This document shows, one piece after another, positions 4,701 through 59,237 of a stretch of DNA of 64,000 nucleotides; position 1 is the stretch's first letter; each line of letters begins with the position of its first letter. Under the pieces are notes generated by a model, which was given only the letters and a program-made list of their open reading frames with translations, had not been told where the DNA came from and made no database searches. Position numbers and translations under genes: made by a program. This DNA comes from Chlorokybus atmophyticus (Eukaryota; Plantae; Mesostigma and Chlorokybus algae): assembly GCA_009103225.1 (NCBI GenBank), contig RHPI01000026.1, positions 305,210 to 369,209 on the forward strand, written 5' to 3'.

Positions 4701-5299
4701 CGAACATTATGTTGCCCGCTACTGACGTGACTCGCGTACCTGCAGCGCGCGAGATGGCTTCGGCCATGCAGGATAGGTTAGCGTTGGCAAAAGCCTGTCT
4801 GCGCGCAGCGCAAGACAGACAAAAAGCCCAAGCTGATGCGCATCGTAGAGAGGCCAACTACGATGTGGGCTGTTCGGTGCTTTTAAGTACCAAAAACGTA
4901 TCCATCAAGGGAGTGGGTACCCGCAAGTTTTTCCCTCGCTGGATAGGCCCTTTCAAAATAACTGATCGGGTCGGCACTCACGCGTATCGTTTGGACTTGC
5001 CAAAGTCGATACGCATTCACAATGTGTTTCACGTGAGTGTACTGAAACCATACCGTTCTGACGGTCGGGTTCAACCTCCTCCACCCCCCGTTGCAGTGGA
5101 TGGCGACGATACTTTCGAGTATGAGGTGGAAGCAATCCTGAGTCACCGTAAGCCTCGACGCGGACGCGCGCCGTCTTACTTGGTGAAATGGAAAGGGTAT
5201 GGTGTTGAGCACAACACGTGGGAGCCCGAAAAGAATCTTACCAACTGCCAAGAGATTCTTCGGGGGTACTGGAGTGCTGTGTCCACACGCGGACGGTAA
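1741..5299 (+). pseudogene. pol: pol: aspartic protease, RT, RNase H, integrase and chromodomain, disrupted
   Basis: PR FLIDTGATHNF; [29 protein letters not shown]; RH VSDAS, YESRK, TDHNPL; INT HDPPYAGH..CDKC, SMDLI, DRDPRF, DGQTERANQ, WIGPF; chromodomain YEVEAIL..YLVKWKGY..NTWEPEKNL. Lesions: TAG at 2644-2646, a +1 frameshift near 2660, and in-frame TGA at 2942-2944 (LPF*LTN for LPFGLTN). Confidence 0.95.
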
Positions 5300-13023: not shown

Positions 13024-15526
13024 TCACCTTCGCTTGTATATGCAGGGCTTCAATGCTGGCCAGACAGGACAGGCTGGGGCATGCGCCTGTTATGAACACA
13101 ACATCAAGAGACGGTTGCGCTATTTGCGCTAACATAGGCCACTCTCGCCTTACCTGCTTTTTCTTGCGCAGCACAAAGAGGATGAACATCTTGTTTGTTG
13201 CGTCCTGTATGAAGGTCAATACCCACACCCGGTAGCCAAACGACATAATGCACAGGCAGTCTGACATGGTGTAGCAGCTCAAGGCTCACCTCACTAATTA
13301 GTTCGAAGTTGAGAGCCCCCAAGGCTTTCAAAAACTGCTCTTTGCAGTTGTCGCCCTCAAATCTGCTTCGGACCTCTGCCACCAGCAGCCAACCTCTGCA
13401 GCAGTCAAGACCTCGCGTTGGGATGGACTGGATAGCTAGCAAGATGATATGACACAACACAACACCACAAGTTCAGCGCACTGCGAGATTGTTACCAACC
13501 TTGGCTTTAGCACGCGGTGAGCCTCCTGCAGGAAAGTGCCATAATCTGTGCCCATCAAGGATAGGCAGAACACAGCCACGTCTACCGCCGATGGCTGTAG
13601 GGGAGTCTGCATCACACATGTTGACTTCAGTCGCACACTGCTGTGGCTGAGCAGACAACCGACCCCAGACACACGACGCTTACGTCTGCAATGTTGCATG
13701 CGGTCACTGCAGGATTGTATGCAACCAGATCCATAGAATACACTTTGTTTGGAGCACTGGCAGCCAGCTTGGCCTCGCCTAGTAACAATGCGAGTGAGCA
13801 TAATACACCACGTTTGCACCACAAGCAAGTAGTTGCCCAGCAGTGATTCCCTGCACATACCACAGCCAAAGTCGCCAATAACCAGCGAAGCAGGCTTCTG
13901 CTTCACCCACTGAATAATGACGTCCAATGGGTTCACCGGCCAGGAGTTGACTTGTTGCTGATAACCGTCATGGTACTGACGGCCCAAAACTATGTTAACT
14001 CTTTTATTGAGACGAGCCAAGAGTGCTAGAGATATCCAGAGGCACACAAGCCACAGGTGAAGTGTACAAACAGCAAGGCACATGAAGCGACAATGTGACT
14101 TGCCTGAGCAAACTGCGAAGGATCCTCTTTAAACGCTTGTAGTGCATCCTCTCCACTGTAGAAAAGTAAACATATTGGTACTCAGTAACACCCAAGAGCA
14201 GCGCGTTCCAACATGCAGTTTACGAGGCAAGAATACCACATGTTGTCAACGCATGTAGTGTATCCTGCCCAACAGATGGACTACATGTGTTGTGCGCACG
14301 CGGTCGCACATGCGCGCGACACATGTAGTGTCTTGCTTTCACGCGCGCGCCAACATGCAGTTGCATTGTGCAATTGCTTCCCGGTGCCGATTGCCGCATG
14401 CACGGGTGAAAACTAATAGCGTGCCAAATAAAAGTTGTAAACACGCACCTGCGTGTGTACAACAACTCATTCAGCCACCGAAACTGCCCTCCACTGAGCT
14501 TTGCGCGCATCTATCCAGTGATAGAAGGTTAGACACGACAGCAATCAACGAGAAGCTGCCAAGCTGCTGGCCACGCGATGTGCACCTTGTCGAGAAGTGT
14601 TGTCTTCTGGCTTTTGCTTGACCCTTTTGCCTTGCTCGGCAGGGATGTTCCAGCAGGCAGCGGCTCATCCTCCGTCTCCGCCACTGCATGCGACCGCTGA
14701 AGGTTTTACCAATGTGAGCCGTTTGCTTGCATGCTGTAATGCTGTGGCGCTACTGCTTGGTTGCAAACACGTGAAGCAACGAAGCTTACCGTTGGCATCC
14801 GTCTGGGGTGCCACGACCGCTGTAGCTGTCCTCATGGCTGCGCGCTGGCGCTGCAATCTTCGCCGTTGGCTCTTGCGAACCCTTGCACCAAGCTGCTCCT
14901 CCACACTTCTTTCCTTGTCACTGGTGCTAACTTTTGCTTGCACCTGACGACACTTCCACTTCGGCACACAACTTGCCCAGCATTCAATTACAATGCAGCG
15001 AATTCCACGCATATGGAATGGAACATGTCATGCAATTACACGCATGCATGCCAGTCTGTGCGTGATGGCATGCATGCTCACAGAAAAGCACAATGCTGCA
15101 ATGGTGGCTCTGCATGCAGACGCGCACCGAAGGAGCAGGTTCATTTTTGTGAGCTGCATGCTTCACATCCTTCTTGCGCTGCTTCCCCTTTCCTTTGGCT
15201 GTGCTCTCATTGCTGGTGCCCATACCGTCCGCGGCAGGCGGAGCCTCGGTTTCTCTGCCCTTTTGCTTGCGCCTTTTGCTCTTGCCAGAGCTTGGGACGA
15301 CGTCGTCAAGCACGCCGTTGACCTCAACCTCAACCTCAACCTCAACTTCGCCCTTATCCTTGCCGTTGGCATTCTGCAGATTGTCAGTTTGCTTCCGCTT
15401 CCGCTTCTGCCTCGGCTTTGGTGACAGTAGCTCCTGCTGAAACGCACGCTGATCCATCGACGGCCAGACTCCCTCGCCACCCGCAGCTCCTCCCTCAAAA
15501 GGCGGCACTTCCAGCATCAGCGACAT
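13024..15526 (-). CDS. RRP8: rRNA-processing protein 8 (SAM-dependent rRNA m1A methyltransferase)
   Basis: LRAKLSGGQFRWLNELLYT; YHDGYQQQVNSWPVNPLDVII; VIGDFGCG; VYSMDLVA..VTACNIA; VDVAVFCLSLMGTDY..FLQEAHRVLKP; LLVAEVRSRF; NKMFILF; terminal LKPCIYKRR with TGA at 13024-13026. Lys-rich N-terminus. Confidence 0.95.
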
Positions 15527-16284: not shown

Positions 16285-19200
16285 ATGGCGGTGGCGCCGT
16301 CTTTGGCATGGGCTCCGTCCGTGTTGAGGGCCTCGGCAGCGGCGTCGGCGTCTACGTCGTTTGCGACGCCCTCGTCTGCATCGTCCAGGAGAAGGGCTGC
16401 TTCGTCACAGCTTCCGTCATCATCCAAGTGGACGAGTGGTGAAGCTGGAGCTCACTCGCTGGCGGAATGCATGAGCACTGGGCGCAAGCGCAGCCCGCAT
16501 GTTCAGGGCATCACATGCTTGTCCACGCTTGAAGCGCCGTCGGCGCCCACTTCTATCAAGGACGAGGCTGTCGTCTCGAAGGATTCCAACCGTCCTCTGA
16601 GAGTGCTCGTCGCTGGTGGTGGCATTGGCGGGCTCGTGTTTGCACTTGCTGCCAAGCGCAGGTGAGCACCAAGGCCATCCAGCTTGCACTGTAGTATCTG
16701 TTATGGCGTTCCCACGCTTTGTATGCATGGGGAGGTCAACAGCTGTCAACTGCCTATCTGTCACTGCTAGTCCGTTCAGCACCCTGATGGCTTACACAGA
16801 GCTCACAGAGAGCTTGTTTAGGCAGAGTCTAATTGACAGGCGTTAGTAAGCGTGCATGGCTCATTCAAAGTGTTTTGTCTCGCAGGGGTTTCGACGTGCG
16901 GGTGTATGAAAGAGAGAGCGAAATTGTGCGCGGGGAGGGCAACAAGTACCGAGGACCCATCCAAGTACAGTCTAACGCGCTTGCTGCACTTGAAGCCATT
17001 GACCAGGACGTTGCGGAGCGAATCAAAGCCGCAGGCACCGTCACGGGAGACAGAATCAATGGTCTTGTGGACGGCCTTACCGGCAAGTGGTACTGCAAGT
17101 TTGACACATGGCATCCTGCTGTGGACAGCGGGCTGCCAGTCACACGCGTGATTTCCCGCTTCACTCTTTTGGAGATCCTCACCGAGGCTGTTGGACCCGA
17201 CTGCATTGAAGTCGGAAGGGCTGTGGTTGGGTTCAAGGAGGATGCAAGTGGCAAGCAGGTGCGTGATGACGCCTAACAGTCGACCATCACTTCTCCAACA
17301 CTTTCAGAGTTGTGAATCGCACATACTCTTGGTCTTGTTTGCAGGTCACTGCTATTTTTAACGATGGGTCGGAGGAGACAGGTGATCTTCTCGTTGGAGC
17401 AGACGGCATCTGGTCCAAGGTACAGGTGGCCTGCAAAGGCTATGCATGTTTGCGAGTCGCCTAGGTATCAGCCCAGTACAAACAGCTCTGCGCAGGTGCG
17501 CAGACAGCTGTTTGGGCACAGTGAGCCGGTCTACTCAGACTACACCTGCTACACTGGAATTGCTGACTTCCGCCCACCTGACCTTGATGCAGTCGGGTGA
17601 GCAGTCAGTGGTGTCGATTATGTAATGGTTGCGTAACACAGAAGGATGACTGACACTGCGTAGGCTACTCAATTGCCATGCTGCAGTGCCACTCTGATGG
17701 TAGACATGACTGGCGTGTTGTTTCTCTCTGTTTCTCTCTGAGCATGAGGTGCTTAACCTTTCAGTAGACCGTTATCAATACTCGGTTGCAACACAGGTAT
17801 CGTGTGTTTCTTGGCAACAAGAAGTACTTCGTGAGCAGCGATGTGGGCCACGGCAAGATGCAGTGGTACGCATTCAGCTGCGAGCCAGCTGGAGGCAAGG
17901 ACGAGCCTGACCGCAAGAAGCAGAGAATCCTGGAAATCTTTGATGGATGGTGAGTTGCATCCACCAGTGGTGGAGGCCTTCCTGTTGTCTGCATTGGTTG
18001 CTCACTTGCGATATGCATACATAAAACCGGTCGAGAGAATCTGCGCGTTTACATCACATACATCTTTCAGGTGTGCGGGTGTCACAGACCTGGTCGAAGC
18101 CACACCGGAACCAGAGATCATCCGCCGCGACATATATGACAGAGCACCCATCTTCAGCTGGTCCAAGGGACGAGTGGCTCTTCTGGGTGACTCCGCTCAT
18201 GCAATGCAGCCCAACATGGGACAGGGCGGTTGCATGGCTATTGAAGACAGCTACCAGCTGGCTTTGGACCTGTGTGAGGAGTTGGAGAAGGCCAGCGAGA
18301 AGGGTGAGTCTCTTGAAGTCAACAAGTGCGCATATCAGCCGGTACAACCAATGAGTGGTGCGCATGCTTACATGGCGCCTCGCAGGGTTAGGTGTTGACG
18401 GAATGAACATGGCATCGGTGCTGAAGCACTACGAGCGGGAGCGCATCCCGCGCGCTGGGGCCATCCACGGCATGGCGCGCATGGCTGCCATTATGGCGTC
18501 CACATACAAGGCATACCTCGGTGAAGGGCTAGGTCCCCTGAAGTTCATCCAGCAGCTGAAGATCCCGCATCCGGGCTCCTTCGGCGGTAAGGTCGCCATG
18601 GGCCTCTTCATGCAGCCCATGCTAAAGTGGGTTCTTGGCGGCAACAACTCCCACTTGCTGAGGGACAGAGCTCCACGGTGTAGCATTACAGAGCTGGTAA
18701 GTCCTTGTGAGTGATTTGCTGATGTAAAACTAGCCATAGTGGCTTACCACCTGCATGATGTGCAGTCAGCAAACAAGTTTGACGAGTTCTACAAGGACGA
18801 TGATGCGCTCGAGAAGAGTGTCCAGGCAGACTGGATTCTAACCCCGATCGTGGGCGGCTTCGACTCTGTGACGGGGCTCCCGAGCCCGCACTGCATGAAC
18901 GTGGTCTCCAGCAGGCCCTTCTTTACTCTGCCCAGGTCTGGCCAGAAGCTTGTCATTGGCAGCAGCCTGTGCGACAGCTCCAAGGATGTGGGTGCTGTCC
19001 TGGACCATGACGCTGTCTGCCCGCAACACGCGTGCATCGAGTGCTTTGACGACGCCTTCTTTGTCACTGATTTGGGCAGCAAGAAGGGCACCAAGCTAAA
19101 CAGGTAATAGCAGTATCAATGTGCTACCACTTGCATTCGGGCTGCAACATCATGCAATACACCTGCATGCATCGAGCAAGTACCAAGATTACATCAGTGG

Positions 19201-21719: not shown

Positions 21720-25269
<3,550 letters not shown>

Positions 25270-27050
25270 CGGATGCTGACATGTTGAGTTGTTGTTGGGT
25301 TGAGTTGTTGGTGGGGTTTGGGAAGGATTGGAAAAGTGTCATGTGGCTTTGTTGTTCGGTCAGGTGTGTGCTTGGGAAGGGGGGGGGGAGGGGGGGGCAA
25401 TATGGGTGGCATAGTCATCAATGCCAGAATGTGCTGTCTAGAACGTCAGGAACGTATTCTGGACAATGCGATGTACGTGTAGCAGCAGCGCTCACGCGCT
25501 GCATACACACCGCACAGCACACACGCAGCAGCGCACAGACAGCGGCACAATGTTGACACATCACTACACCATGCACGTCATCATCAGCATGAGTGCAAAC
25601 AGCACGGCACGCGCATCAGAACTGAACACGCATGACACAGCACACACAGAAGCACGGCACGCGCGCACGCACGTACGCACGCGCACACACTTCCAATACC
25701 GAGACGGAATAGGTGTAGTTAGTGTAGCAACAACACCACGACATTCATGTTTGCCACAAACAGCTATCAGAAAAGAAATAAAGAAGAAACGCAAACCATT
25801 GCATCAACTGCCCAGTCCTACATCGGGGTAGGGAGACTAAAGATAACCTGTAGTCAGTGATTGTCTTGTGCACAGGCTTACCTAAACAACACTGCGTGCG
25901 TGCGCGCACGCGCACATAAGATGTCGGGTGGGTGAGTGCAAAGGAGGAGGAGGGGTATGGAAAATGTGTTTGTTGTCCGGTGCATGAGTGCCGACATGGA
26001 TCAATCAAACCGAGATGCGCCACCAACAAGTGCGCCTGTGAACACCCTTACGCACGTGCAACCACCCACGACACAGGCAGCTGGTGGCGTGGGCGTGTGG
26101 GCGCGTGTGTGCGTGTGCGAGAACACTAGGGCAGCTATTCTGCCCCGAGAGCGCCACACATGCCCAAACACATACAGACGGACTTTCCCTGTTGGCTCCC
26201 TCCTTATACGAATACGTACCCCGTCGCCGCCATGGCTGCTGCTACTGTTACTATGCACATGGTAGTACAGCTGATGCCCCCCCTTAGCCATAGCCCTTGT
26301 GTTGTACACAGCTAGCTAGCTATAGGTGATGGTGTTGTTGAAGTCTTCGTGGAGGAGGACGCTCCTCACAACCCCTGCCCGCTCTCAGATTTGAGATGAA
26401 TAAGTACACTGTGCATGCTTCACATGCTCGCAGAGTGTTGCTTTAGGCACAGCTGATGCAGTTGTGGGACAGCATACGTCTGCACCCTTCGCCCTCCGCT
26501 CCCCTACTACTACTACTGCCTCCTTGCTTGCCTGCCTGCTTGCTTGCTGATGCGGGAGCCAGGACTTGGGTCTAACCTCCCGGCCATGTGTGCTGAGTTG
26601 ATTGCATCAGAGCCACTGGAAAGGCCTACACATCCGTATTCGGTACACAACATACTGTGTCCGGCTGCGACAGCTCAACACGACATTGTGACACAAAGTG
26701 CACTGATATCCTGCCAAGCCATCGACTGGAAGTTTTGGTTCTTTGCCTTCCAACCTTTGGTGGATTCAGTCGCCACCAAAGCAGACAGACAGGCCAGTCT
26801 GCCTGCCTCTACACTGCCAACACAATCACTGTTGCTGCTGGGGGAATCAAATACTACCTACAGTACACGTCATTGCAGTGTCGCAATCGCTGCGAGCCAC
26901 TCGTGCCAATGCAGCACCATGCTGACTATCTAAGACAGCGGTCCATCTCGCCATCAATCTCACTCTCTCACTAACCCTTGCTATACCAACCAACACAACA
27001 ATAGCAGCTGTCGAATGTTCTACTTGCATCTTTATTGTTCTCATTCTCGA

Positions 27051-30000
27051 TCAATTGAGAACCTCCCCGTGCGGTTGCAGCGTGATGAGCGCCACGGCCT
27101 CCTCCAGCTACACATCAAGCAAGCATGCAAGTCAATACCATCACAAGGAAGCATGTCGCGGGTTGGTAGTTGTGTAGGATGGGTGTGCGGTGCTCATACG
27201 TGTAGCGCTGTCAAGTTGTGCGTTGGCGTGATGTGGATACGTGATGTGACTCTGTGTGTGTGTGTGTGTGGCGCACTCTCATGATAGCGGTGAAGAATGC
27301 GGGGTCGAGCGGCCGAGGCGGGATCAGCTTCGCGTAGCCGGCTTGGCCTTGTAGTTGGTACTTCTGTTTGCGGGTCACAAGCTAGATGTCAACATTGAAT
27401 GCAACGGGTGTATCCAGTGAGACACACAATCCCCCCTCCTCACCGTCTGTCTGCAGCGCGTCCCCGGCAGCGCGAACACCACCTCCCCCGCGTTCTCCGA
27501 GCTAACGGTCAGGTGGCCCGCCAGGGAGTAGGAGGGGCCGGGGGACGTCAGCTGAGGGGTGTCCTCAGCACCCTGTTAGGAGGTTAAAAGTGACTTGTGC
27601 CCTCGGGTACCACTCTGGTTGATGTACACAACTAAACAACGTCACTCATGTACATATCACCCCAGAACTCACTTCCATATTGAGATACACCGCTGTGGCC
27701 GTCCCGACCGCCTGCGCCAGCTGCTCCTCCGGCGACTTGGCCACCGCGCTCAGCGCAGTGAAGTGCTCATGCTGGTGCTGGTGCTGTTGTTGTTGTTGTT
27801 GTTGCTGTTGATGTTGTGGCGGGTGCATTGCGAACACGGGTGGCGCCAGCGCCGAGGCTGTTACCAATGACACAACGTACACACAGGTTGGATAAATGTG
27901 ATACGCGCAAGCACACTCGGACACGCGCACATGCACACGCACGTGCATAGATTGAGTGGGACCTGCCTATGGGCATGCCGAGAGCAGGCGGAGGGTAGAA
28001 GCTGCCCATGTTGTTGTTGTTGCTGTTGTTGTGCAGGAACTGCGCGGCTGCGAGGGCCGCAGACGCGTACAGCTCATTGTCATACACCTGCAAGAAGATT
28101 GATGTCAACACAACCACATTTACACACATACATAATTGTGACACCCACCAAGAACACATACACACACCTTGGCTGCCGAGTTGTCGTACACGCGGTACGA
28201 CTCGCTGCGGTGATCCCGATGCGGCACAGACTTCCCTCCGTTATCGTGGTTACTGCTGTCCTCATCATGGTTGTTGTTGGTCTGTCTCTTCTTGTTGTTG
28301 TGGTCTTTGTTGTCACTTGTGGTTGCGAGTGCCACGCAGCACCGAAACAGCCCGGCGACGATAGTCGAGAGGACGGAGAAGAGGGCGGAGAGGATGCCGT
28401 GCTTCCACAGGAGAAAGAGGACGAAGAGGCCTGGGAGGAAAGGAGGAAAGGAGGAGAGAGGGGTGATGTGGGGAGGTTGGGATGTTGGTGATGTGTTTCA
28501 TGAGACAGGGTGTGGATGAGACATTGATGTGGTTCATGTGCGCGCCCGCATGTTTGTGCGTGCGTATGTGCGTGAGTGTGCGTGCTGATTTTTTGTGTGT
28601 GTGCCGGTTTGTGCATGCATCCTCACCGATGCCGACGCCAAAGAGTGCGAAGACGGAGCCAAGTATGGAGTGCCAGCACCCGCGCTTGACGCTGCAACCC
28701 AGCTGTGCGCGCGCGTGCACAAAGTCAGCGTAAGTGATAAGCAATGCGGACGTCGTGGCGTACACGCGTGCACGTACACGTGCCATGCTGTGTTGCGCAG
28801 GTGCACGCGTACACATATCACACATACGCGCATGTGCCCACACGAACGCGCCAGCGTGCAAGCATGCAAGTGGACGCACTTGCACACGCAAACGCACACA
28901 CTCGTGCTTCCGCACATGCTCAGGCTCGCACGCACCCACACCCACACCCACACCCACACCCACATACCCACCTGCATGAACTTGCAGTCCGAGCACGTGC
29001 CCGTGCCATTACCATTGCTCCCTTTCCCCGTCCCCGGCGTCGGATCCACGGGGTTCTGAGACAAATAGCATTAGCATCTCACACCACCATACACACCAAT
29101 CACAACGCACACGCGGACAACAACTCACCGGCGTGTTGTACGAGTAGTCCGTGGCGTTGGTCTTGAACGTCACGGGGCTCGTGTCCGTCACCACGCCGCG
29201 CGAGTCGTACAGCACAACGATGCAAGACCTGGGGTGGGGATATTGTTGTTGTTGTTGTGGTTGTTGTGGTTGTGGTGGTGGTGGTGGCAGTGGCACTTTG
29301 GTACCTGTTTGTGCCTAGGTCGTCTTCGGTGTGGACGCTCCATGTGAGGTTGGCTCTCTGGCCCGCCGCTATGGACAGAGTTTTCCCCTGTGTGTGGGTG
29401 TGTGGATGTAAACATGCGTGTGCGTGTGTGCGTTGGTAAAGAGTGGGTGGGGCGACGACGGAAGGGACATATAGTTGAGTCGCAACTGGGGACTTGATGC
29501 ATGACGTTAGACTTTCCCCTTCTCAACTCTCGGGTCAGGTAGCAATATTCAGTGACTGGCTGCTATACACTACTGCTTACCATTCATGATGCTCACACGT
29601 ATCAGCAGGAGTGCTGCAACAATGGTAGTGATACCATACCATACCATCCTGACAACCATGACAACCCTGATTGTAGTAGTACTGATATTACTGGTACTAC
29701 TGCCACTGCTGCTGCCATCAATAAAAAGAAGATACTCCACACAGTACACACTGCCTGTGCTATACCAGCAGTACTGGCAGTGTACTGACAGTACAAGTAT
29801 CACACAAAACCATTCTTCCCAACCTATTACCCAGTAGTAGGTCCCAGCCAGCCCAGTAGTACACCCCAGCCCAGCAGCACACAACATCCCCCACATCCCC
29901 CACATCCCTCTCCCTCCCCTCCCTCACCTGCACCGGCGCTATCCCCACGGAGCAGTTGACCACAGAGACGGTGTAGTCCGCATCCAAAGTTCCGGAGTTC

Positions 30001-33000
30001 TGGCATTCGGCGGTGAGTGAACCGTCGCGCGACAGCGAGGAGAAGGTCGGGGCGGACACCGACAGGATCTTGCCGGGGGACCTGTGTGGGTACGTGTGCG
30101 TGAGTAACTATACACACTGGGTGGGTGAGAGTGAGTCGTAACTATACACACTGGGTGGGTGAGAGTGAGTCGAGTCTCTCTCTTGCCTGTTGATGACGAA
30201 GCGGATGTCGTCTGCGTTGAGCTCGAGTGTGAGGACGGACGTCAGGGTCTGGTCTACGTACAGACCCAACCACCTGCACGACGGCAGCAACACCACCAGC
30301 GAAATCAACGACAACATTACCGACATCGTCACCAAGAGAGAGAGAGAGGAAGAGTTGTTGTGTCGTACCTGTCTCCTGTGGCGCGTACGTTGGTGAATAG
30401 CTGCGTGGAGTTGTCGAGGAGGTAGATGGGCTGCTGACCCGCGGTGCGCTTTGCCATGTCAGCCTGAGGGTGACAGTGTGGGTGTGGGTGTGGGGCGGTG
30501 GGTGCTTGTGTGCAAGCGTGTGCATGTGCGTAAACTGCGTGTGCGCGTGTACTCGTGTGAATGCTTATCTGTGGGTTTGGGTTTGGGTGTGGGTGTGGGT
30601 GGATATGCTTTTGGGTGTGTGTGCTTGTGTGCGAGCGTGTGCATGCACGTAAACTGCATGTGCGTGTGAACTTGTGTGAATATGCCTATCTGTGTGTGCA
30701 CGTGTATATGAGGACGCGCACTTGAACGTGTGCTTGTGCGTGTTTGCCTACATGTGTCTGTGTGCACCTGTGTTTCAAGTGTGCCTATGTGTGCGATTGC
30801 GTGTGATCGCGCACGCGCGCGTGGGTCTGTGGTTGCGTGCGCGTGTGTGTGCATGTGTCGTTCTCTGTCACCGTGTCCACGTTACACTTCTTTTCTTCTC
30901 ATCATCAAGCTTACAGTGACAAGGTCGACAATCTGGTTATTGAGGCAGCTACCCACCGGGAGCGCGCACTTGCCGTTCTGCTGCCTGCATGACACGCGAC
31001 CGGTCGTGTTGATGCTACACATGTTGTGTTGATGAAAATGTGAGTGTGTTGTTCCGCACTTACTGGTAGGCTGGGAAGGAGGTGCCGATGAGGTTGCACT
31101 GCGAACCGTCCATCGAGAACTGCGTCTTGTCCACCACAAGCCACTGATCTCTCCTCGCATTCTGTGTGGGGGAACACACACACACGAAAGAGAGAGAGAC
31201 ACCAAGTCACCACATCTGTGGCAGTCATCTCACCTAAAAGAGCTTTCAAACATGCACGCATACCCAAGTTGTGAGGTGGGGTATGAGCAGGAGCTGCGAC
31301 GTCATCACCCTCAACGACTACACACGATACAACACACAATTGGTTAACAACAACTACCCACAACGACACAACGACACATCCACAACAACACAGTCGAGCC
31401 CCCAACCGTGTACGGCGCGAAGTCTCCCTGCAGCTTCGCGAGCAGCGTGCGGTTGGAGTCGACCGCGACGGGCGTGGAGGGACTCAACACCAGAGACTCC
31501 TGTGTCACATGTTGGGATGTGGGGATGTGGGGGTGTTGGAATGTTGGGAGCAAGGGAAGTGTTGCGTGTGTACCGATGTCTGGTAGGGTGTGGTTTGTTT
31601 CTGGATGGTAACGACTAGGTTGAACTCCAGCGAAGCCTCACCGATGGAGTAGGCAGAGTACCTGGTGTGTTGGATCAGAATCAGTGAGTCAGTGAGTAAG
31701 TGAGAGTGGTGCGCACACACGCACGCATATAGTGTGTATTCGTGCATGTGCGCGTGCGCGCGCGAGTTTGTGCGCGCATATCTGCGAGTGTGTGCGTGTG
31801 CTTCATCACCAACAGCACCTCCTCCCACCCCCCTCTCACCACAAGCCATTGAATCTCAGGCAATGGTAGCTCTCGCTCGTCCCTCCAAACAACCCCCCGC
31901 TAAACCAATTACAATCCAGATTCCCCCGCGTCCGGGTGTCGGGACCGTTGCCGAACGTGGAGTCCCAGGTGTTGTCGAAACCGCAGCCGCAGCAGAAGCC
32001 CTGGGACTGGGGGATAGAGACGCCCGAGGAGTCCTTGAACCTGAGAGGGGGGGGGGNNNNNNNNNNNNNNNNNNNNNNNNNNNNNNNNNNNNNNNNNNNN
32101 NNNNNNNNNNNNNNNNNNNNNNNNNNNNNNNNNNNNNNNNNNNNNNNNNNNNNNNNNNNNNNNNNNNNNNNNNNNNNNNNNNNNNNNNNNNNNNNNNNNN
32201 NNNNNNNNNNNNNNNNNNNNNNNNNNNNNGGGTGGGTGGGTGGGTGGGAGTGTATCTGTATCTGTATCTGTATCCGTATGTGTGTATCTGTGTATCCGTA
32301 TCTGTAGTGTATCTGTATCGGGATGTGTGTATCTGTATCGGGATGTGCTCTTGTGTATTTGCGGGCCTGTGTATTTGTGTATGCGCGTGTGCGCGTGTGA
32401 GTGCGGTAGTGTGTGCGTATCTGTATGTGTGCGTGTGCGTGTGCGTGTATGTGTCTATGTTACCATCCGCAGGTTGGGCTCGTGTCGAAGTCGCCTGCAC
32501 TGCAGCTGCTGCTGTAGTTCCACAGCTCGTAGGGAGCGTAGTTGAAGTCCTGATGTCAAGGATGAGAGCATGTGAGTGAGTGAGTCTCTCACTCTCGCGC
32601 TTTGCATCACACGCGCACACACCCACCTTGATGTAGTAGATGGGGTACGTGTTATACACTGGCGTCTTGACAACCGATATGGCGTATGGCACTGTCATGG
32701 ACTTGACTACGCCGTCCACGTCGGCAGCTTGCGTCACGTACGCCTGCACGCTCGTCGTCGCCAACGTCTGCAATGAGGGAGGGGGGACAAGGTTGCTGAG
32801 GAACACTCTCACACGCGGGTGTATGCAAACTCACACGTAAGCATGTGTGCACGTGTGCACATGTGCGCGTTTATACATGTGTACCTACACACGGATCCGT
32901 GCGCACCACACGTGCACGCGCACACTTCTGCCACGCACGCACAAAACAAGATATGTGCGTGCGCGCGGGGAAACAAGCGCGCGTGTGCATGTGCGCGTGT

Positions 33001-33303
33001 GTGTTTACTGCGCGTGCGTGCGTGAGTGTGTGTGTGTGTGTCGCACACGCACAAGCATCCCACCCCCACCCATCTACCCTCACTCACGTGTCCGCTCGTG
33101 ACGCTCATGGTGACGACCATCTTCTTGCTGCAGCTTATGGTCTCGTTCGCATTGATCCCAACGGTGCCGTCGTTGACGCAAGTGTTGATAGCACTCGAGG
33201 CCAGGATCGTGGAGTCACCGGCCACCGACACAACAAGAAGCAACAAGAAGAGTGGGATAGACAGTGTGCTGATGGGAGGTCTTCCAGGAGAAGGATGAGA
33301 CAT
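27051..33303 (-). CDS. HAP2: HAP2/GCS1 class II gamete fusogen, about 21 exons
   Basis: Signal peptide (IPLFLLLLVVSVAG); ILASSAINTC..CSKKMVVTMSV; DFNYAPYE..C..PTCGW; SQGFCCGC..RTRGNLDC..SESYHCLRF; LVLSP..LLAKLQGDF; WLVVDKTQFSMDGSQCNLIGTSF; C..PVGSCLNNQI; SVLTLELNADDIRFVINRSPGKI; NSGTLDADYTVSVVNCS; CIVVLYDSRG..DTSPVTFKTNAT; TM segment followed by CC. ATG at 33303, TGA at 27051-27053. No in-frame stops seen in the exons I traced. Confidence 0.95.
30104..30171. repeat. Exact 34-bp tandem duplication in a HAP2 intron
   Basis: GTAACTATACACACTGGGTGGGTGAGAGTGAGTC at 30104-30137 and 30138-30171. Confidence 0.9.
32057..32229. other. Assembly gap (N run) inside HAP2 intron 3
   Basis: The flanking exons join in phase 2 (TG|G = Trp, PTCGW-FKDS), so no missing exon is required. 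Confidence 0.95.
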
Positions 33304-36699: not shown

Positions 36700-39600
36700 C
36701 ATTGTGTTGTTGTTGCTACACATGCAGCACGACCGCTGCACACGATGGTCATGTTCTGCCTGCTGACGGCTGTCGTGCTGGAGAGCACTGTGGTGACGGC
36801 CTGACTGACAGCTGACACACTGAGTGCAGCACCAGCGGCAGAATGGCGCAGTTGGCGGCCTCCAGAGCGGCCAACCGGCGCTTCTCCTTCTGCAGCCTCA
36901 TCAACCTGCTCAGTAAACCCCACCTTGAGCCAGCCAAAACGCATGCCATTGTGTAGTGTGCTCCAGTTTGCACGCGGGCGACATACCTCAGCCTTTGGCA
37001 AGGCTCAATACTTCCCGTGCTTCAGCTTGTATCCTCTTTGGCTTGGAGACCTTGCCTTTGCCATCTCTGCTTGCAAGGGCTTTTGGTCCATTACGACCCA
37101 GGGAGCTTTATCCACAACAATGCCACTGGCAGTTGCAGAGGTCGGCAAGGACTCTACCGGCCTTTCCCTGACAATCTGTGCCTTTTTCACTGCTGGCTTG
37201 ATCGGTGGTCGTGGTGCTTCCACCATAGGCTCCTCCTACTTGGGTGGTGGTGCAGGCTTCGTTGTTGTTTTCTCTACCTGCCATTGAGGAGTGCATGCAT
37301 ACACTCCCTTTTCTCGGCGCACAGAGCCTCGGCGTGCTGCTTGGCCTCAGCCATAGCCGTTACGGTGCGGATCTCATATGCCTAGTGTCCCGATGTTCTT
37401 TCCTGCCAGGAGGCGGCGAGTGATGAACAAGCAGATATGTTAGGTTTAACATCACACTCCCGGAGCGTTGCGCAGTTTCAAAGTAAACATTGCTAACAAT
37501 TGCTGTCCAGTGGCTAATCGATATGCTCACCTAACTGTATGTGGTCTGCTTCGCAACCCGGTGCTCCTTGAGCTCATCATGTTGCCCTCGATGTGGCGTA
37601 CCATTCCTGATACACTCAATCTGGGCATCAAAGGCAGCTGCTTTCTCACCAACGCTTGTCCAGGACCTGTGATTGAATGGCACCGAGGTTGATGGAATAG
37701 CCAACGGGTGTGCCAAGCCGCTGTAGAACCAGAGCTGAACATCGAACCGGACAACCCTGTTTAGCTCCTGATGAACAGCATGCTGACTGCGCAAAGATGT
37801 AGACCAGACGAAAATGTCTAGTATCGCTTCGCACAGCAAATCGATTAGCTACTAGCTAGACTGCAGACAATTCATTGTGGAGTAATATCATTGCAGCAAT
37901 TTGCTGTAGCGTTTTGTTACCTTGCTAGAGCTACAAATGGAGCTTGTCATGCTCTGCCTGTGTGCCAGACAACAAATCTTCTGACTGTCCAGCTGGCGCG
38001 CCATCTTCCTGCCTCCTGCAGCTGCTTACATTGCCTGGTGGATCAGATTCATCTTCTCCGCAAGAGCAATGCTTTTGTATTCTATGCAGGACTCGTCCTC
38101 TTGCAATGCTGCAGTCGGCGCAAGGATGCATGCAATGCTATGTGTCATTGGCAGGCAGTAACTACTGTAAAGATTGCTTGGGTCCTGCAACGAGTCACCT
38201 ACCGAGGCATTCAAATCTGCCAAGCTGTAGCACAGCAGCTCCAAAGACTTGGTGCGCACTTTTTTGGTCTTTTCAGCGCCGCGTTATAGTAAAGCCCGAG
38301 CAAATGCCATTGTGTGTGTCACAAAATGTTACCAACATGCTCCTTAGCCATGGCCCCTAGCTAGTAACTGTGTCTGGAGGTGGGAGCGGAAGGGTGGAGG
38401 TTTTGTACTTGCTTGCTTGTTTGTACGTTGCCTTGTGGTGCTCTGCTTGCTGTTGCTGCTCAAAACTCGCACATACATAACTACTGCAATCGACAAGCAA
38501 AGGCGACCTGCAGGAACGCAATGGTTGCCTGTTTGGCTTTAATCTCTGCTCGAGCCTTCTTCAGCCTTCCCTGCGCAGTCATGACGTTGCTGATCACCTG
38601 ACTGCAAGTCGCCGTGCAAAGCACAACCAACCTCTTACAAGTGCATACCCAATGGCTTCCTTGCTGCTGCTTGCTCACTTCTCAGACAATGGCATGAAGT
38701 AATGTACAGTTGCAATGTTCAAAGCAGTGTCATCGCTTACATCTAACCTGCTTCATTGAAAGTGCTACTTGGCAAGCTTCTGCCTTGCTCCCGTCAGTTC
38801 CCCTAACAAGTTATGCATGGGACGGGAGCTGCTGGCAACCGCATGTCAGCCAAACAGCCATACCACAAAAACCTTCACATCCCACACAGCCACACCAACA
38901 TGGCACTCAATGCACAAGATGGTACTCTTTGGCATGCATGATGCAGTCCAACAATGTAAGGCAATTCAGCCACAGTTCCCCACTACTAGCAATCGCAGCA
39001 ATATAAGGACGAATTGAGCGGATCAGCCTGCAGTCTCCAATTGCAATCCAGCGGCACTCCAGCAAGCCGAGCAGGGGCGACAGCGGCACCTAGGCTCACG
39101 TAGAACGCCACTCATAAAGTTCGACAACAAAACCCCTTGTCATCAACACATTACCACAACCAGCCAAGCGGTGGCATGCAGGCACATGAAGTCACGTACA
39201 TGAAGACATGCACATGCCGCGCAAGCAACGCTACCTAACTCTCACCCTGTGCTATAGGGGTTGTAAGCACACACGCCTGCAAACATATTGGGGAAGGTTC
39301 TGGCACTGTTCACAATCAACAGCGCGGCGGTGGTGAGCAAGTACCCTATGACGCACGAGCAACACGGTGCATGCGCCGGAGTGCATCCGCTACAACGGCC
39401 TCTCTTGCGGATCATAAAGCGCTCCCTTCAGAGAGCGCTCAACACCTCAAGGGACTTGTCATCATGTCCAACTGAACATGCTCTGCAACGGCATCTACAG
39501 CAACCATGATCGCGTGCATGTGCATGTCAACACACGCATATGCACTCGCATTCTCATATGTACGCGTACATGTGTAAGCACTCACACATATATGTGGGCA

Positions 39601-40636
39601 TGGGTATGCAATCACTTGTTCATCCAGCCTTTACGGGAACAACAGTCACTTCTCCACACACATAACTTACCTTTAGTGCCGGACAAGTGGGCGCGAAAGG
39701 CTTACCCTTCGCTCAAGCTGTTGTCTTCATGGGTGCACGCTTGCTCAAGGGCTGAGAGTTTGGATCATATAGCAAAGAAGAACGTGGCAGGGAGACAAGA
39801 GAACAAAGAGAGAAAACTTGCATGCAGCCCCTAGCTGGAAAAACTTGCATGCACAAACATCATGTACGAACACAGCACAAACAATGCGCGTCGCTTACAT
39901 TTTGTGACTTGAATGGCAACCAACTCAGTTGAGTCTCCACACTCATGGCAACAACAATCATGCATTAACTAATGCACAGTACGCGTACGCGTCTATGCGT
40001 GTCAAATGAGCTTCAGATTAACCCGCGGATCTTGCGGTTTGTAATGACATGCACAGTACGCTGTGCACCTTCTTCCAACATCGCGGGGGTGAAGTCTTCG
40101 CGCCTCCCAAGGGCCACCGCAAGAACAGCAGCTTCAAATGGGCAGAATTCCCACAAGAGCTTAAGACTGCGAGCACGTTGATCAACTCGCACGATATCGC
40201 TGACCGCGAGGGTCTCCACAGCCTCCACAATACTGGCAGCATGAAATGCAAATCCGTTGTCTAGTCGCTGTGGTGCTCCGCTCAACCAGCGGGTCAAAGG
40301 TAAATCTCCAACAATCTTTCCACAGAACAGCATATCAATGTTGTAGATGTCCTCCAGCTTACCATGCCACGCAGCGCGCTCTTGGTTATTGTTGAATTGT
40401 TGATGCCTCAATGCCACTTGAATGTAGGCATCCAACTGGTCTCCAGCCGTAAAAACTAGCTCCGTCGCAAGCGTGCCCAAGAACCGTTTCGGATTGGCAT
40501 TCACGTCAGCTGCAAATTGCTCATCCTGTGTGTCATCCACTAAACCCAACAGCCGCTCCTGCGCCTTCGCAATTGGTTCGAACCATCTTGGTGGCTCTGT
40601 CATCAGAAAGGTGCACGCAATGAGTTTCACGCAAAT
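36700..40636 (-). pseudogene. Decayed multi-exon orphan gene: ~189-aa unknown domain, two GCRCxxC repeats, coiled-coil region, P/K-rich tail
   Basis: In-phase exons 40636-40069, 39751-39706, 39494-39345 and 39089 onward. In-frame TGA in the 39494 and 39089 exons, TAA at 38284-38286, TAG at 37236-37238. Two acceptors are mutated relative to the + strand paralog. Confidence 0.6.
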
Positions 40637-42231: not shown

Positions 42232-44423
42232 TCACATAAACCCTCGCCGCCTGTACTGCTTGTCATACGCGATATTGAACTTCTCCACGAGCTCGTTCGT
42301 CAAACTGCAAACATCATCAGTTATGTCGTCTCTGACTGTGCACCACACACCAACCTCCGATGCAAGCACACATAACATCAATTGCGCTTATGTTGGTACC
42401 TTGTGCCCTTGGTCATGCTGGCAAGATATGACGTCAAGAGCGTGTCATTGTACTCCTGCAACCAGACAGTTCACAGTCAAGCCCCGAGCAAATAAAGTGT
42501 GTTAGCACATGCATGCTTACAACACGTCCTCACAGTGGCAAAGTCGTCGTGGAAGCGCTGCGTGTCGATCGTAGGCAGTCTCTGCACGAGGCTAGCAACT
42601 TGTCTCAGCAGCGAGTGCTGGTAAGGCAAGTTGCCTGCAGCAGCATTGAAGGCGTGAGTAATCGACATGTTGGTGAGTGGTTGTGTCTACTCATCTCACC
42701 TGCGCGGATAGCCACAAGGAGGGTGTGAAGCTCCTTCACTCTGCTGTTGAGCATCTTGATCGCGCTCACCATGCTCGTCAAGTGCGCCGTTACTGCATAG
42801 TTGGGAATTAAAGAAAGCTATCCATGAAATACCGATACTGTCATGGAAACGCACACATGTATACACTTGCTTGCGTGCTCGCGCACGCGCATGCACCGTT
42901 GCAATGCATATCAACGTGCGGTCACGGCGCACGCACGCACGCATGCGCGTACACACACACGCAAGCACGTACCAAGACGTACGCAGATGTGTGTGCGAAT
43001 GCTGTCATCCATACGATAAACTACATGCAATGTGCACGTACGTTGGGTTGCGCCTGAGGTGCCGCCAGTTGGTGTTATCCTCGCCACATGGTCGACTGAT
43101 ATCCTCTCTGCCTCCACTGTCTGATACCGATATTGCTACTCAGCTGCAGTGTGCACACACCCACACAATGCATATACTTCCGCACAACATCACCTCAATC
43201 GTGTAAGACGACTTCACGAAGATGAGAGAAGGGAGGCCGTCGATGACATGCAGCTCACTCTCATATATTGTGATGGGCAGGTCTTTGCTCGTGTGCGACG
43301 GGATGGGGTCGAGTAGGAGGTAGACTGGGCTCTCGTTGTGCTCCATCATCTGAATCCCACTTTAGTTAGACACTAGCTACATGCCCACGTATATGTGTAT
43401 GTATAGATATGTTGTGTTTGCATAAGCATGCATGGGTTGTGTCTCCGGGCAACGTGAGCGCAGAGTGCACAGGCAAGTGCACATGCGACTGTACACGTTT
43501 GCAAGCACACGCCTATGCGCGCACATGCGCCCTCGCATGTGCAAAGGCGTGTGTGCGTGAGAGCGCACGAGCGTGCGTGCGTGCGTGCATGCGTGTGTGT
43601 GACCACACGCGCAAACACACACATTTACGCATGCACGCGCGCATGCTCGTGTGCATGCGTGCTCACATGCAAGTGCGCAAGCATGTGTACATGTGCGTGT
43701 ACTGCATACATGTATACGCACACGTTTACAAACAATCCATGAAACATGCATGCAGGACGGAGTGTGCATGAGCTCACATGCACGACAAGCGACAACACTG
43801 CAAAGCCCACGCCATACCAGTTTGTGGATCTGCATGTCATCATCCGACGCTTCGCTGCCCGTTGAATACCATCCCAAAATCTCGTATGTCGGAAACACCT
43901 TCTTGTCTGCCACACAACAGAGAAGACATCAACCAACACATACACATTGACACCAACAACAAACAAACCCTCACATTGCTCCGTCTTTTGTTGGAAAAAC
44001 TCCCGGTCGATCTCAACCGCGCCGCTGCTGACCGCGTCGTACTTGAGCTCGAACGAGTTGCAGATCTCCACCACGCGCCCGGACTGCAATCCTGCAAGCG
44101 TGTCACTTCAAACAACGCATGCATGAACTCATCCAAACGGCCTTGCATGCATGCGTGCTGTATGCGTGCATGCAGGCACGGTATAACACAAACAGAAGGC
44201 CAGTTGCATGCATGCGTGCAACGCATGAGTGCAGACTTGTGCGCGCGAGAGCGAGAGCGAGAGAGCGAGCGAGAGAGCGAGAGAGAGCGAGAGAGCGAGA
44301 GCGCGAGAGCGCGAGCGCGAGAGCGAGCGAGAGCGAGCGAGAGCGAGCGAGAGCGAGCGAGAGCGAGAGCGAGAGCGAGAGCGAGAGCGAGAGCGAGAGA
44401 GAGCGAGAGAGAGAGAGCGAGCG

Positions 44424-57642: not shown

Positions 57643-59237
57643 TCACGAAGCTACAAAGCCCAGCCAGCTGCCGATGATGAACCATCCAGCAATCAACCCA
57701 ACAAACCCAGCCCACGCGATGAAGAACTGCCAACCCCCAAAGTACACGCCCACACCCATAATGACAGCGAACGGCACGAGCGAGCGCACGAACGAGGAGA
57801 GTTTGACGAACCGCCCCCTCAGGAACATCATGACAGCGAGGCGAGCGGCGTTCCAGCGGCCCCGCTGGTTGAGGTAGTTCATGTTGTTGAGGCAGTGCGC
57901 CACAAAAGAGTGGCAGTTGCTCGTGAGGATGTTGTACGTCACGTGCTGGTACTGCCGCGCGCGCGACCGAAGCTGCGAGTCCCAGTCCTCAACCCTACCC
58001 TCATTGGCCTGTGTGGTGATGTATTGCATGAAGTCAGTGTTGCAGTGGGATGCTTGTACCCGTAATGAGCCACTTGTAGACTCATGCATGATCCGATCGC
58101 TGACTTAGGTGTCTGTAGTTTCTGAACATGTGCACATACACCCACATGTAGCAATGACACACACACATACATGGAGTGAGGTCACGCACAGACAGCCACC
58201 CATGCACCCTCACATACATGCACACCACGCACGCACGCACCATAACACTGTCTCTTTTCCCTGCTCACCTGTGCAGGGTCGAGGCGCATGTATCTCAGCG
58301 GGGCCCCGAATGCAAACTGGTCGACGCTGACGTAGTAGTGTCCCGCGAAGTCCAGAATTACGCCGTCCGACATGCAGATGCCCAGGTGCCCCACGAACGG
58401 GGCCAGCCACGCTATCAGCGGCAGGGGCGTCCACACCAGACAGAATGGAAAACGTTTCCTGCGTGACGTGGTGTGCTGCATTAGTGACTGGCGTCGTGAA
58501 CACGGCTGATGTGAATGTGCATGTGTGTTACAGTGTGCATGCGTGTGTGCATGCATGCTTGCAAGTGTACGCGTGCATGTTTGTGTGTGCTGGTGCGCTT
58601 GCACGTGTGTGCACGGCTGTGCATGAGTGCGCATGCATGCTGCTATAGGGGTGTATGCATAGCTGCAGCGGAATGTACCAGTGTACCACACGTCCCAACT
58701 CGCCAACCACATATATGTATGTGTTGGGCGAGTTGGGACGTGTGAGCATATGTATGGGCATAACTACAGCCACAACTGTGATGTACGCATGGAGTGCTGC
58801 TGTACGGGTTCCTGTTCATGTGAATCAGGATTCAAACGCCTTGAACAACCATCTCAATAGCCGTAGTGTGTGTGCGCATCACCCCAATTCAAGCTCAACA
58901 CAACCAAAATGCGGAACAACCTTGCGTTCGTAACTCTTGACAACGCTCGTTCAAGCGACATATTGCAGAATGACAGAGACTTGAGAATGTCAACTAAGGG
59001 CTTGAGTGCATGGCAACACACGCATGCCACAATCAAACAAATTGTCTGTGTGCTGCGTGTGGGTAAATGTTAAGCTCCAGCTGATGCTTTGACAGTCAGC
59101 TGCTGCCTGTCGTACCTGGCCGGGTCCATCACTGCCGGTGCAGTTGACGCTGCTCCGCCCCCCGGCGACACCGCCGCCTTGCCGTCCTCCTCAACCTCAG
59201 AAGGCTGACCAGCAGCCGTCTCATAGTCGCTCCCCAT
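57643..59237 (-). CDS. TMEM222/RTE1-like (DUF778) membrane protein, 3 exons
   Basis: MDPAR|[59 protein letters not shown]; [29 protein letters not shown]; two C-terminal TM segments. TGA at 57643-57645. An alternative start at 59300 is possible. Confidence 0.92.

What the first reader, a model, noticed from the sequence alone, without database searches (positions are those of the whole stretch)
27051..33303. Complete, apparently intact HAP2/GCS1 gamete fusogen in a green-lineage alga
Seen: an in-phase ~21-exon model with a signal peptide, the conserved cysteine pattern, the fusion-loop exon 31840-32040 (SQGFCCGCGFDNTWDSTFGNGPDTRTRGNLDCNWFSGGLFGGTSESYHCLRF, with exposed W/F and the Arg preceding a Cys), the SPGKI junction into the Ig-like domain, a TM helix and a CC motif. 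Known: HAP2/GCS1 is the class II fusogen required for gamete fusion in Chlamydomonas, flowering plants, Plasmodium and Tetrahymena. Inference: the organism retains sexual cell fusion, which would matter if sex has not been observed in this species.
Basis: partly seen in the sequence, partly recalled or inferred. Interest (0 to 1): 0.7.

Follow-up and report, generated by a model that had tools for sequence, protein, structure and literature searches.

The report
Intact HAP2 gamete-fusion gene in Chlorokybus
The early-branching streptophyte alga Chlorokybus, in which sex has never been seen, carries a complete and unbroken gene for HAP2, the protein that fuses gametes; this is an ordinary conserved gene, but it adds a fusion gene to the published meiosis-gene evidence for hidden sex and appears to be missing from the public gene set.

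Summary
On the minus strand, 33303 to about 27115, lies a multi-exon HAP2/GCS1 gene. Exons 1-17 (663 codons: signal peptide, ectodomain, membrane anchor, CC motif) are in phase with no stops. Fifteen of their introns are GT-AG and one is GC-AG.

The assembly gap (32057-32229) lies inside intron 3. Homologues run from exon 3 into exon 4 without losing a residue, and the split codon restores the family's conserved Trp.

Eleven exons hit Pfam PF10699 in collinear order, three above threshold on their own. PDB HAP2 structures are the top hits. The 18 Cys positions conserved in the family and the Glu/Arg pair essential in Chlamydomonas are present.

The 3' tail (exons 18-22) is provisional.

The organism is Chlorokybus: a neighbouring gene is 100% identical to JGI Chlat1 model Chrsp57S09123. 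The genome paper calls sex unknown there and inferred cryptic sex from meiosis genes. It does not mention HAP2. No public protein containing the fusion-loop exon was found.

Function is inferred only.

The same scan earlier noted a broken extra HAP2 copy elsewhere in this genome.

Verdict: new member of a known family, of modest interest.

The parts
33088..33303 (-). Exon 1: ATG, signal-peptide-like hydrophobic core, start of domain I with two conserved Cys
   Evidence: Kyte-Doolittle maximum 2.75 over LSIPLFLLLLVVSVA. Homologues P0001 and P0027 align to its mature part.
32627..32767 (-). Exon 2
   Evidence: PF10699 positions 24-66. tblastn hits from Closterium, Spirogloea and P0002.
32464..32549 (-). 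Exon 3: beta strand b with the conserved Glu (Chlamydomonas E126 equivalent) and two conserved Cys; ends TG|GT
32041..32463 (-). Intron 3, which contains the assembly gap (N at 32057-32229) between C-rich low-complexity flanks
   Evidence: Homologues are contiguous from exon 3 to exon 4.
31840..32040 (-). Exon 4: fusion-loop (cd loop) exon with SQGFCC, the Arg (R185 equivalent) before NLDC, five conserved Cys and aromatic loop residues
   Evidence: PDB 5MF1/6DBS/6E18 at E 1e-11. PF10699 at 30.3 bits, positions 103-155. Alignment.
31574..31661 (-). Exon 5
   Evidence: PF10699 positions 158-181. The split codon gives the conserved Trp of the W-Y motif.
31407..31499 (-). Exon 6
   Evidence: PF10699 positions 195-224. 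tblastn 53-56% identity to Closterium and Spirogloea.
31264..31317 (-). Exon 7 (18 codons)
   Evidence: Phase and frame. Placed at Chlamydomonas ectodomain residues 293-328. Weakest exon, supported by phase only.
31064..31161 (-). Exon 8: first half of the classic HAP2-GCS1 signature (ij loop)
   Evidence: PF10699 at 28.0 bits, positions 249-279..
30915..30984 (-). Exon 9: second half of the signature, two conserved Cys
   Evidence: PF10699 positions 281-302..
30369..30463 (-). Exon 10
   Evidence: Phase. Placed at Chlamydomonas residues 378-412. No Pfam hit on its own.
30187..30273 (-). Exon 11: end of domain I; GC donor (CAG|GCAAGA)
   Evidence: PF10699 positions 339-365. The junction restores the family consensus N-R-S-P-G.
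29928..30081 (-). Exon 12: SPGKI linker and start of the Ig-like domain III
   Evidence: PF10699 at 34.9 bits, positions 367-415. PDB Arabidopsis HAP2 5OW3 residues 385-433, E 3e-5.
29305..29387 (-). Exon 13: domain III
   Evidence: Phase. It fills the 24-28 residue interval between exons 12 and 14 in Closterium and Chlamydomonas.
29129..29228 (-). Exon 14: domain III, R-x-C-x-V-x-LYD motif
   Evidence: PF10699 positions 445-472. tblastn 50-59% identity.
28972..29055 (-). Exon 15: stem, CxxC
   Evidence: By eye it gives, with exon 16, a four-Cys stem pattern like that of the homologues. The automatic alignment misplaced this short exon.
28627..28702 (-). Exon 16: stem Cys pair, C-W motif and first half of the membrane anchor
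28168..28430 (-). Exon 17: rest of the membrane anchor, RCC motif, basic/His-rich start of the cytoplasmic tail
27943..28087 (-). Exon 18 (provisional 3' end): tail
   Evidence: GC3 0.80. The best-scoring donor in the required phase is CAC|GTGCGT at 27942.
27673..27857 (-). Exon 19 (provisional): Gln/His-rich tail
   Evidence: The chosen frame has GC3 0.69. The alternative frame, which stays open from exon 18, has GC3 0.29.
27444..27572 (-). Exon 20 (provisional)
   Evidence: GC3 0.88; phase-0 GT-AG borders.
27277..27381 (-). Exon 21 (provisional, weak)
   Evidence: GC3 0.72; phase-0 borders.
27115..27207 (-). Exon 22 (provisional, weak) with TGA stop at 27115-27117
27031..27036 (-). AATAAA, a possible polyadenylation signal about 80 nt after the proposed stop
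   Evidence: Read directly from the sequence. Function not tested.

Best explanation
This is the Chlorokybus orthologue of HAP2/GCS1, a single-pass type I membrane protein of about 880 residues.

Its parts are a signal peptide, a class II fusogen ectodomain, a Cys-containing stem, a membrane anchor and a cytoplasmic tail. The ectodomain comprises domain I, domain II with a bipartite aromatic fusion loop held by an Arg-Glu salt bridge, and an Ig-like domain III. The tail starts with a CC motif.

By analogy with Chlamydomonas, Arabidopsis and others, it would sit on one gamete type and insert its fusion loops into the partner's membrane. It would then trimerise and fold back to merge the two cells.

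Shown here: the gene is complete, unbroken and keeps every family-defining residue that I could test. Inferred: that it is expressed and drives gamete fusion in a sexual cycle that has not yet been observed in this alga.
For: - Exon model: 17 exons are in phase over 663 codons with no stop, and all acceptors are CAG or TAG.
- Splice junctions: four split-codon junctions recreate family-consensus residues, namely PTCG-W-F, the W-Y motif, N-R-SPG and R-x-C..LYD.
- Pfam: PF10699 hits are collinear from profile position 24 to 472.
- PDB: HAP2 structures are the top hits for exons 3, 4 and 12.
- Coverage: exon 1 and exons 2-14 map onto Chlamydomonas ectodomain residues 0-36 and 37-559, with no missing block.
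- Cysteines: 16 of the 18 widely conserved Cys columns hold a Cys in the aligned exons. The two remaining stem Cys of exon 15 were read by eye, because that exon was misplaced by the aligner.
- Key residues: equivalents of E126 and R185, shown essential in Chlamydomonas (PMC5332557), are present.
- Codon bias: GC3 is 0.80 in the exons, against GC1 0.50, GC2 0.47 and intron GC 0.55, and is uniform across the exons.
- Biological context: the genome paper found the 10 core meiosis-specific genes in this alga.
Against:
- There is no selection test, because no close relative's sequence was found.
- Continuity across the gap rests on scaffolding, phase and homology. It is not read sequence.
- The 3' tail is only a prediction.
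- No public protein model contains the fusion-loop exon. A gamete-specific gene that is silent in culture would give that result, and so would a silent relic.
- Sex has never been seen in Chlorokybus.
Confidence: 0.72

Rival explanations
1. It is an intact-looking relic. Chlorokybus is effectively asexual, and this HAP2 is no longer expressed or needed but has not yet collected disabling mutations.
For: - Sex is unknown in the alga.
- No transcript-derived or annotated protein with this exon exists among the 1.84 billion cluster representatives, which stand for about 15 billion public proteins.
- No selection test was possible.
Against: - There are 663 or more codons over 17-22 exons without one stop, frameshift or lost splice site.
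- Every conserved Cys and the Glu/Arg pair are kept.
- The strong third-position GC bias (0.80 against 0.55 in introns) is not eroded in any exon.
- The meiosis toolkit is also kept.
Confidence: 0.18
2. It is an assembly chimera. The scaffold join at the N gap links the 5' part of one HAP2 copy (exons 1-3) to the 3' part of another (exons 4-22), so no single intact gene exists.
For: The gap falls between exons 3 and 4, in low-complexity C-rich sequence.
Against: - Orientation, order and reading phase fit exactly across the gap.
- The apparent intron, about 423 nt, is within the range of the other introns, 73-540 nt.
- GC3 is similar on both sides, 0.76 and 0.81.
- Both parts are unbroken.
Confidence: 0.05
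3. The gene is functional but serves a membrane fusion other than gamete fusion.
For: There is no direct evidence. It is simply not excluded, because nothing is known about when the gene is expressed.
Against: In every organism where HAP2 has been tested, it acts in gamete fusion (reviews listed; PMC5332557).
Confidence: 0.05

Closest known systems
Chlamydomonas reinhardtii HAP2 (PDB 5MF1, 6DBS, 6E18)
   Same: - Same domain order and same conserved Cys positions.
- SQGFCC motif, the Arg before NLDC (R185) and its Glu partner (E126), and aromatic residues in both fusion loops.
- SPGKI linker into domain III and a four-Cys stem.
- A membrane anchor followed by K-x-G, a short hydrophobic stretch and CC.
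   Different: - Only about 39% identity over exons 2-14.
- It lacks the Cys-rich C0D0 insertion that Fedry et al. describe as essentially algal-specific.
- Loop 2 reads N-W-F where Chlamydomonas has D-F-W.
- The tail is unrelated.
Predicted HAP2 of other streptophyte algae: Closterium (CAI5951715.1), Spirogloea muscicola (SM000049S16695), Mesostigma viride (Mv05193)
   Same: These give the highest summed similarity along the gene: 342 and 312 bits for Closterium and Spirogloea, with names. They are collinear over the same exons and of similar length (804-889 aa against about 880).
   Different: Identity is still only 35-41%. Mesostigma, the sister lineage, is not the closest, which suggests a fast-evolving protein or an imperfect Mesostigma model. 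Intron positions were not compared.
Arabidopsis thaliana HAP2/GCS1 (PDB 5OW3)
   Same: It is the best PDB match for the domain III exon, including SPGKI (E 3e-5). The cytoplasmic tail is basic and His-rich after the anchor, as reported for plant HAP2 (my own knowledge, not tested here).
   Different: The fusion-loop region matches only weakly (E 0.16). Plant HAP2 uses an amphipathic helix rather than two aromatic loops (title and abstract of PMC6089408 as listed, and my own knowledge).
Viral class II fusion proteins and EFF-1/AFF-1 (the fusexin superfamily)
   Same: The same three-domain fold and trimeric hairpin mechanism are expected, through membership of HAP2 (PMC5332557).
   Different: There is no detectable sequence similarity. 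The fold was not modelled here, because a joined protein could not be submitted.

Membership tests
HAP2/GCS1 (Pfam PF10699) | Significant match to the family profile | tested here: met
   Exons were scanned one by one. Exon 4 scored 30.3 bits, exon 8 28.0 and exon 12 34.9, against a cut-off of 27.4. Eight further exons gave sub-threshold hits. All hits are collinear from profile position 24 to 472 of 515.
HAP2/GCS1 | Conserved ectodomain and stem cysteine pattern | tested here: met
   Sixteen of the 18 Cys columns conserved in at least 15 of 16 homologues (12 of 12 for the two exon 1 columns) hold Cys in the aligned exons. The last two, in exon 15 (CxxC), were read by eye because the short exon was misplaced by the aligner. 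Only the chlorophyte-type Cys-rich insertion is absent.
HAP2/GCS1 | Arg (Chlamydomonas R185) at the start of helix alpha0, and its Glu partner (E126) in strand b | tested here: met
   The Arg lies in T-R-G-N-L-D-C of exon 4 and the Glu in P-Y-E of exon 3. Both fall in columns invariant in 12 to 16 homologues. Their role is described in PMC5332557.
HAP2/GCS1 | Hydrophobic or aromatic residues in the membrane-inserting loops | tested here: met
   W and F in the first loop (N-T-W-D-S-T-F) and W-F after the conserved Cys align with the Chlamydomonas loop residues. Surface exposure was not modelled.
HAP2/GCS1 | Type I topology: N-terminal signal peptide and one C-terminal membrane anchor | tested here: met
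   Hydropathy maxima are 2.75 in exon 1 and 1.8-2.1 in exons 16-17, and there is no other hydrophobic stretch in the exons as translated. No dedicated signal-peptide predictor was available.
HAP2/GCS1 | Complete domain I-II-III ectodomain with the class II fold and trimer formation | not testable with these tools
   Sequence coverage of Chlamydomonas ectodomain residues 1-559 is complete. The fold was not predicted, because the spliced protein may not be joined and submitted.
HAP2/GCS1 | Gamete-specific expression and requirement for gamete fusion | not testable with these tools

The most novel reading that the evidence does not exclude
Chlorokybus, on the deepest branch of the plant lineage and known only from asexual zoospores, has a hidden sexual cycle. 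In it, flagellate cells act as isogametes and fuse through this HAP2. The gene, absent from the reference gene set, would be the marker that lets the inducing conditions be found.
Probability: 0.5. Interest if true: 0.55.

Novelty: new member of a known kind. Interest (0 to 1): 0.35.

Why it matters
Chlorokybus and Mesostigma form the earliest-diverging branch of the streptophytes. According to the genome paper, sexual reproduction is unknown in Chlorokybus, and cryptic sex was inferred there from meiosis genes alone (PMC7027972).

An intact gamete fusogen supplies the other half of the sexual toolkit, cell fusion. It also gives a concrete, stage-specific marker: spliced HAP2 mRNA can be followed under starvation or zoospore induction to look for gametes.

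The finding also points to a gap in the public annotation. No protein containing the fusion-loop exon was found, although this genome's proteome is in the searched collection.

HAP2 is nearly universal in the green lineage, including Mesostigma, so its presence is expected rather than surprising.

Tried and rejected
There was no whole-protein search, no structure prediction or fold search, and no tree with a concatenated row. Everything was done exon by exon.
- dN/dS: no close relative was found. The exhaustive representative search with exon 4 gave at most 56% identity, and a metagenome scan with exon 4 found nothing.
- Public model of the gene: two profile word searches returned no Chlorokybus protein, and nothing retrieved is more than 64% identical to any exon. 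These word searches are lossy, since only 8000 candidates were scored, so absence rests mainly.
- Papers: Chlorokybus together with HAP2, GCS1, fusogen or gamete fusion appears in no relevant paper. The held supplements of the genome paper contain no HAP2, GCS1, GEX1, SPO11 or DMC1 strings. One PMC id that I recalled from memory was wrong.
- Exon 7: I rejected the frame reading V-V-E-G-D-D in favour of the frame that fits the phase and resembles the homologous segment.
- Exon 19: I rejected the frame that stays open from exon 18, because its GC3 is 0.29.
- Exon 18 donor: I rejected CAG|GTCCCA at 27962, which has the wrong phase and a score of 1.8, in favour of 27942.
- Looking up our earlier findings by sequence gave nothing.
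Full report
**Gap first**

The gene reads on the minus strand. Exon 3 ends ...GGA TG followed by GTAACA at 32464/32463. On the gene strand the N run (32229 down to 32057) is flanked by CCCA repeats on one side. On the other side it is followed by a run of C, then TCTCAG and the G at 32040 that opens exon 4.

TG plus G makes Trp, giving P-T-C-G-W-F, which is the family consensus.

Full-length homologues found later run across the junction without losing a residue:
- Spirogloea residues 137-166 lie on exon 3 and 167-234 on exon 4.
- P0002 gives 107-137 and 138-214.
- P0008 gives 57-85 and 86-150.
- P0013 gives 13-40 and 41-108.

Against the Chlamydomonas structure, exon 3 ends at chain residue 126 of 6DBS. 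The aligned part of exon 4, which starts at the fifth residue of that query, begins at residue 130, so no residues are missing between them.

The gap is therefore intronic low-complexity sequence, and no exon is hidden in it. Physical continuity still rests on the scaffold, not on read letters.

**Exon model**

From three-frame reading I placed 17 exons from the ATG at 33303 to 28168.
- They total 1989 nt, or 663 codons, with every phase consistent and no stop.
- Fifteen introns are GT-AG and one is GC-AG (exon 11, CAG|GCAAGA).
- All acceptors are CAG or TAG, and introns are 73-540 nt long.

Without RNA, the best support for the junctions is that split codons recreate conserved residues:
- the Trp after P-T-C-G;
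- the Trp of the W-Y motif at exons 4/5;
- the Arg of N-R-S-P-G at the GC-donor junction;
- the Arg of R-x-C-x-V-x-L-Y-D at exons 13/14.

Third-position GC is 0.80, against 0.50 and 0.47 at positions 1 and 2 and 0.55 in the introns. It lies between 0.69 and 0.94 in every exon.

The tail is less certain. The proposed exons are:
- exon 18, from 28087;
- exon 19, 27857-27673;
- exon 20, 27572-27444;
- exon 21, 27381-27277;
- exon 22, 27207-27115, ending in TGA.

These are in phase if exon 18 uses the donor CAC|GTGCGT at 27942. That donor is the best-scoring one in the required phase. The alternative, staying in the frame of exon 18, has GC3 of 0.29 and was rejected. This gives about 881 codons in 22 exons. 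An AATAAA lies at 27036-27031.

**What it is**

Scanned exon by exon, eleven exons hit the 515-position Pfam model PF10699 in strictly collinear order, from position 24 to 472. Exons 4, 8 and 12 pass the family cut-off on their own.

In the Protein Data Bank the top hits for each exon tested are HAP2 structures:
- Chlamydomonas (5MF1, 6DBS, 6E18), E 1e-11 for exon 4;
- Arabidopsis 5OW3, E 3e-5 for exon 12;
- the only hit for exon 3, which is weak (E 10) but collinear.

I added the exons as separate fragments to an alignment of 16 homologues. Exon 1 and exons 2-14 tile Chlamydomonas ectodomain residues 0-36 and 37-559.

Sixteen of the 18 widely conserved Cys columns hold Cys. The remaining two are the CxxC of exon 15. 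The aligner misplaced that exon, but by eye it forms with exon 16 the four-Cys stem pattern.

The Cys-rich insertion in the C0D0 loop is absent. Fedry et al. describe it as essentially algal-specific.

The Arg that is essential in Chlamydomonas (R185) and its strictly conserved Glu partner (E126) are both present, in invariant columns. Aromatic residues occupy both fusion-loop positions.

Exon 1 has a signal-peptide-like core. Exons 16-17 give a membrane anchor followed by K-H-G, a short hydrophobic stretch and R-C-C. This mirrors the Chlamydomonas arrangement.

Identity to any named homologue is only 35-41% over exons 2-14. The highest summed similarity is to the streptophyte algae Closterium and Spirogloea.

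**Organism**

Earlier notes of this scan named Chlorokybus. I tested that. A neighbouring RTE1-like gene (57646-58373, minus strand) is 100% identical over both its exons to the JGI model Chlat1/Chrsp57S09123. The only mismatches are where the alignment runs into the intron.

The window is therefore from scaffold 57 of the published Chlorokybus atmophyticus genome. To my knowledge that strain was later renamed C. melkonianii.

**Known or not**

The genome paper (PMC7027972) says that sexual reproduction is unknown in C. atmophyticus. It reports the core set of 10 meiosis-specific genes and concludes that the alga probably reproduces sexually. It does not mention HAP2 or GCS1 in the text or in the held supplements. 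No paper in the library links Chlorokybus with HAP2, GCS1 or fusogens, apart from a classification review.

An exhaustive HMMER search with exon 4 against 1.84 billion cluster representatives found HAP2 proteins only, none more than 56% identical. The Chlat1 proteome is in that collection, as the neighbouring gene shows. So the public gene set seems to lack a model containing the fusion-loop exon. Two further profile searches also found no Chlorokybus protein.

I cannot exclude a partial model without exon 4. The neighbouring published RTE1 model itself looks truncated at the N-terminus, so annotation flaws here would not be unusual.

**How it most likely works**

By membership of a family whose mechanism is established (PMC5332557), the protein would be displayed on one gamete. 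It would insert the two aromatic loops of domain II into the partner's membrane, trimerise, and fold domain III and the stem back to pull the membranes together.

Shown here: the gene's integrity and the conservation of the residues needed for that mechanism. Not shown: expression, gametes, fusion.

**Rivals**

- A silent relic in an asexual lineage (about 0.18). It is disfavoured by the complete lack of lesions and by the undecayed codon bias, but not excluded.
- A scaffold chimera at the gap (about 0.05).
- A role in some other fusion process (about 0.05).

**What could not be done**

There was therefore no whole-protein search, no fold prediction and no tree with a concatenated row.
- dN/dS needs a close relative, and none was found.

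**Verdict**

This is a new member of a well-known family and is very likely the functional copy. It is useful as a marker for the long-suspected cryptic sex of Chlorokybus, and as an annotation correction, but it is not surprising. The gene described here is the intact one.

Noticed in passing
window 57646-58763 (-): This is an RTE1-like (TMEM222) gene. The published model Chrsp57S09123 (156 aa) starts at a Met at 58373. The Pfam RTE1 match begins about 30 codons upstream in the same open frame, and homologues from Mesostigma and others align there too. The public model therefore looks truncated at the N-terminus.
   Followed up: partly
window 670-5296 (+): A Ty3/gypsy chromovirus-type LTR retrotransposon. 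It has gag, aspartic protease and an uninterrupted 784-aa stretch with RT, RNase H, integrase and a chromodomain, so it is possibly a young copy.
   Followed up: partly
window 30104-30172: A perfect 34-bp tandem duplication (2.0 copies, 100% match) inside intron 11, a few bases after the only GC donor of the gene.
   Followed up: no
window 32627-32767 (exon 2) compared with homologues: Chlorokybus HAP2 lacks the Cys-rich insertion in the C0D0 loop. That insertion is present in Chlamydomonas and about half of the aligned homologues.
   Followed up: partly
window 13439-14128 (-), 17835-18395 (+), 22246-22938 (-), 39418-39831 (+), 43380-43928 (-): Pieces of neighbouring genes, none obviously related to sex: an Rrp8-type methyltransferase (PF05148), an FAD-binding monooxygenase (PF01494), a weak presenilin-like match, a weak match to the dynein heavy chain C-terminal domain, and a weak JAB/MPN match.
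   Followed up: no
protein P0002 (ENA metagenome contig of 7,990 bp): An unnamed 719-aa HAP2 from a metagenome assembly. It is as similar to the Chlorokybus exons as Closterium is (41% identity over exons 2-14) and shares several exact 5-residue words with them, so it may come from an unsampled green alga.
   Followed up: no
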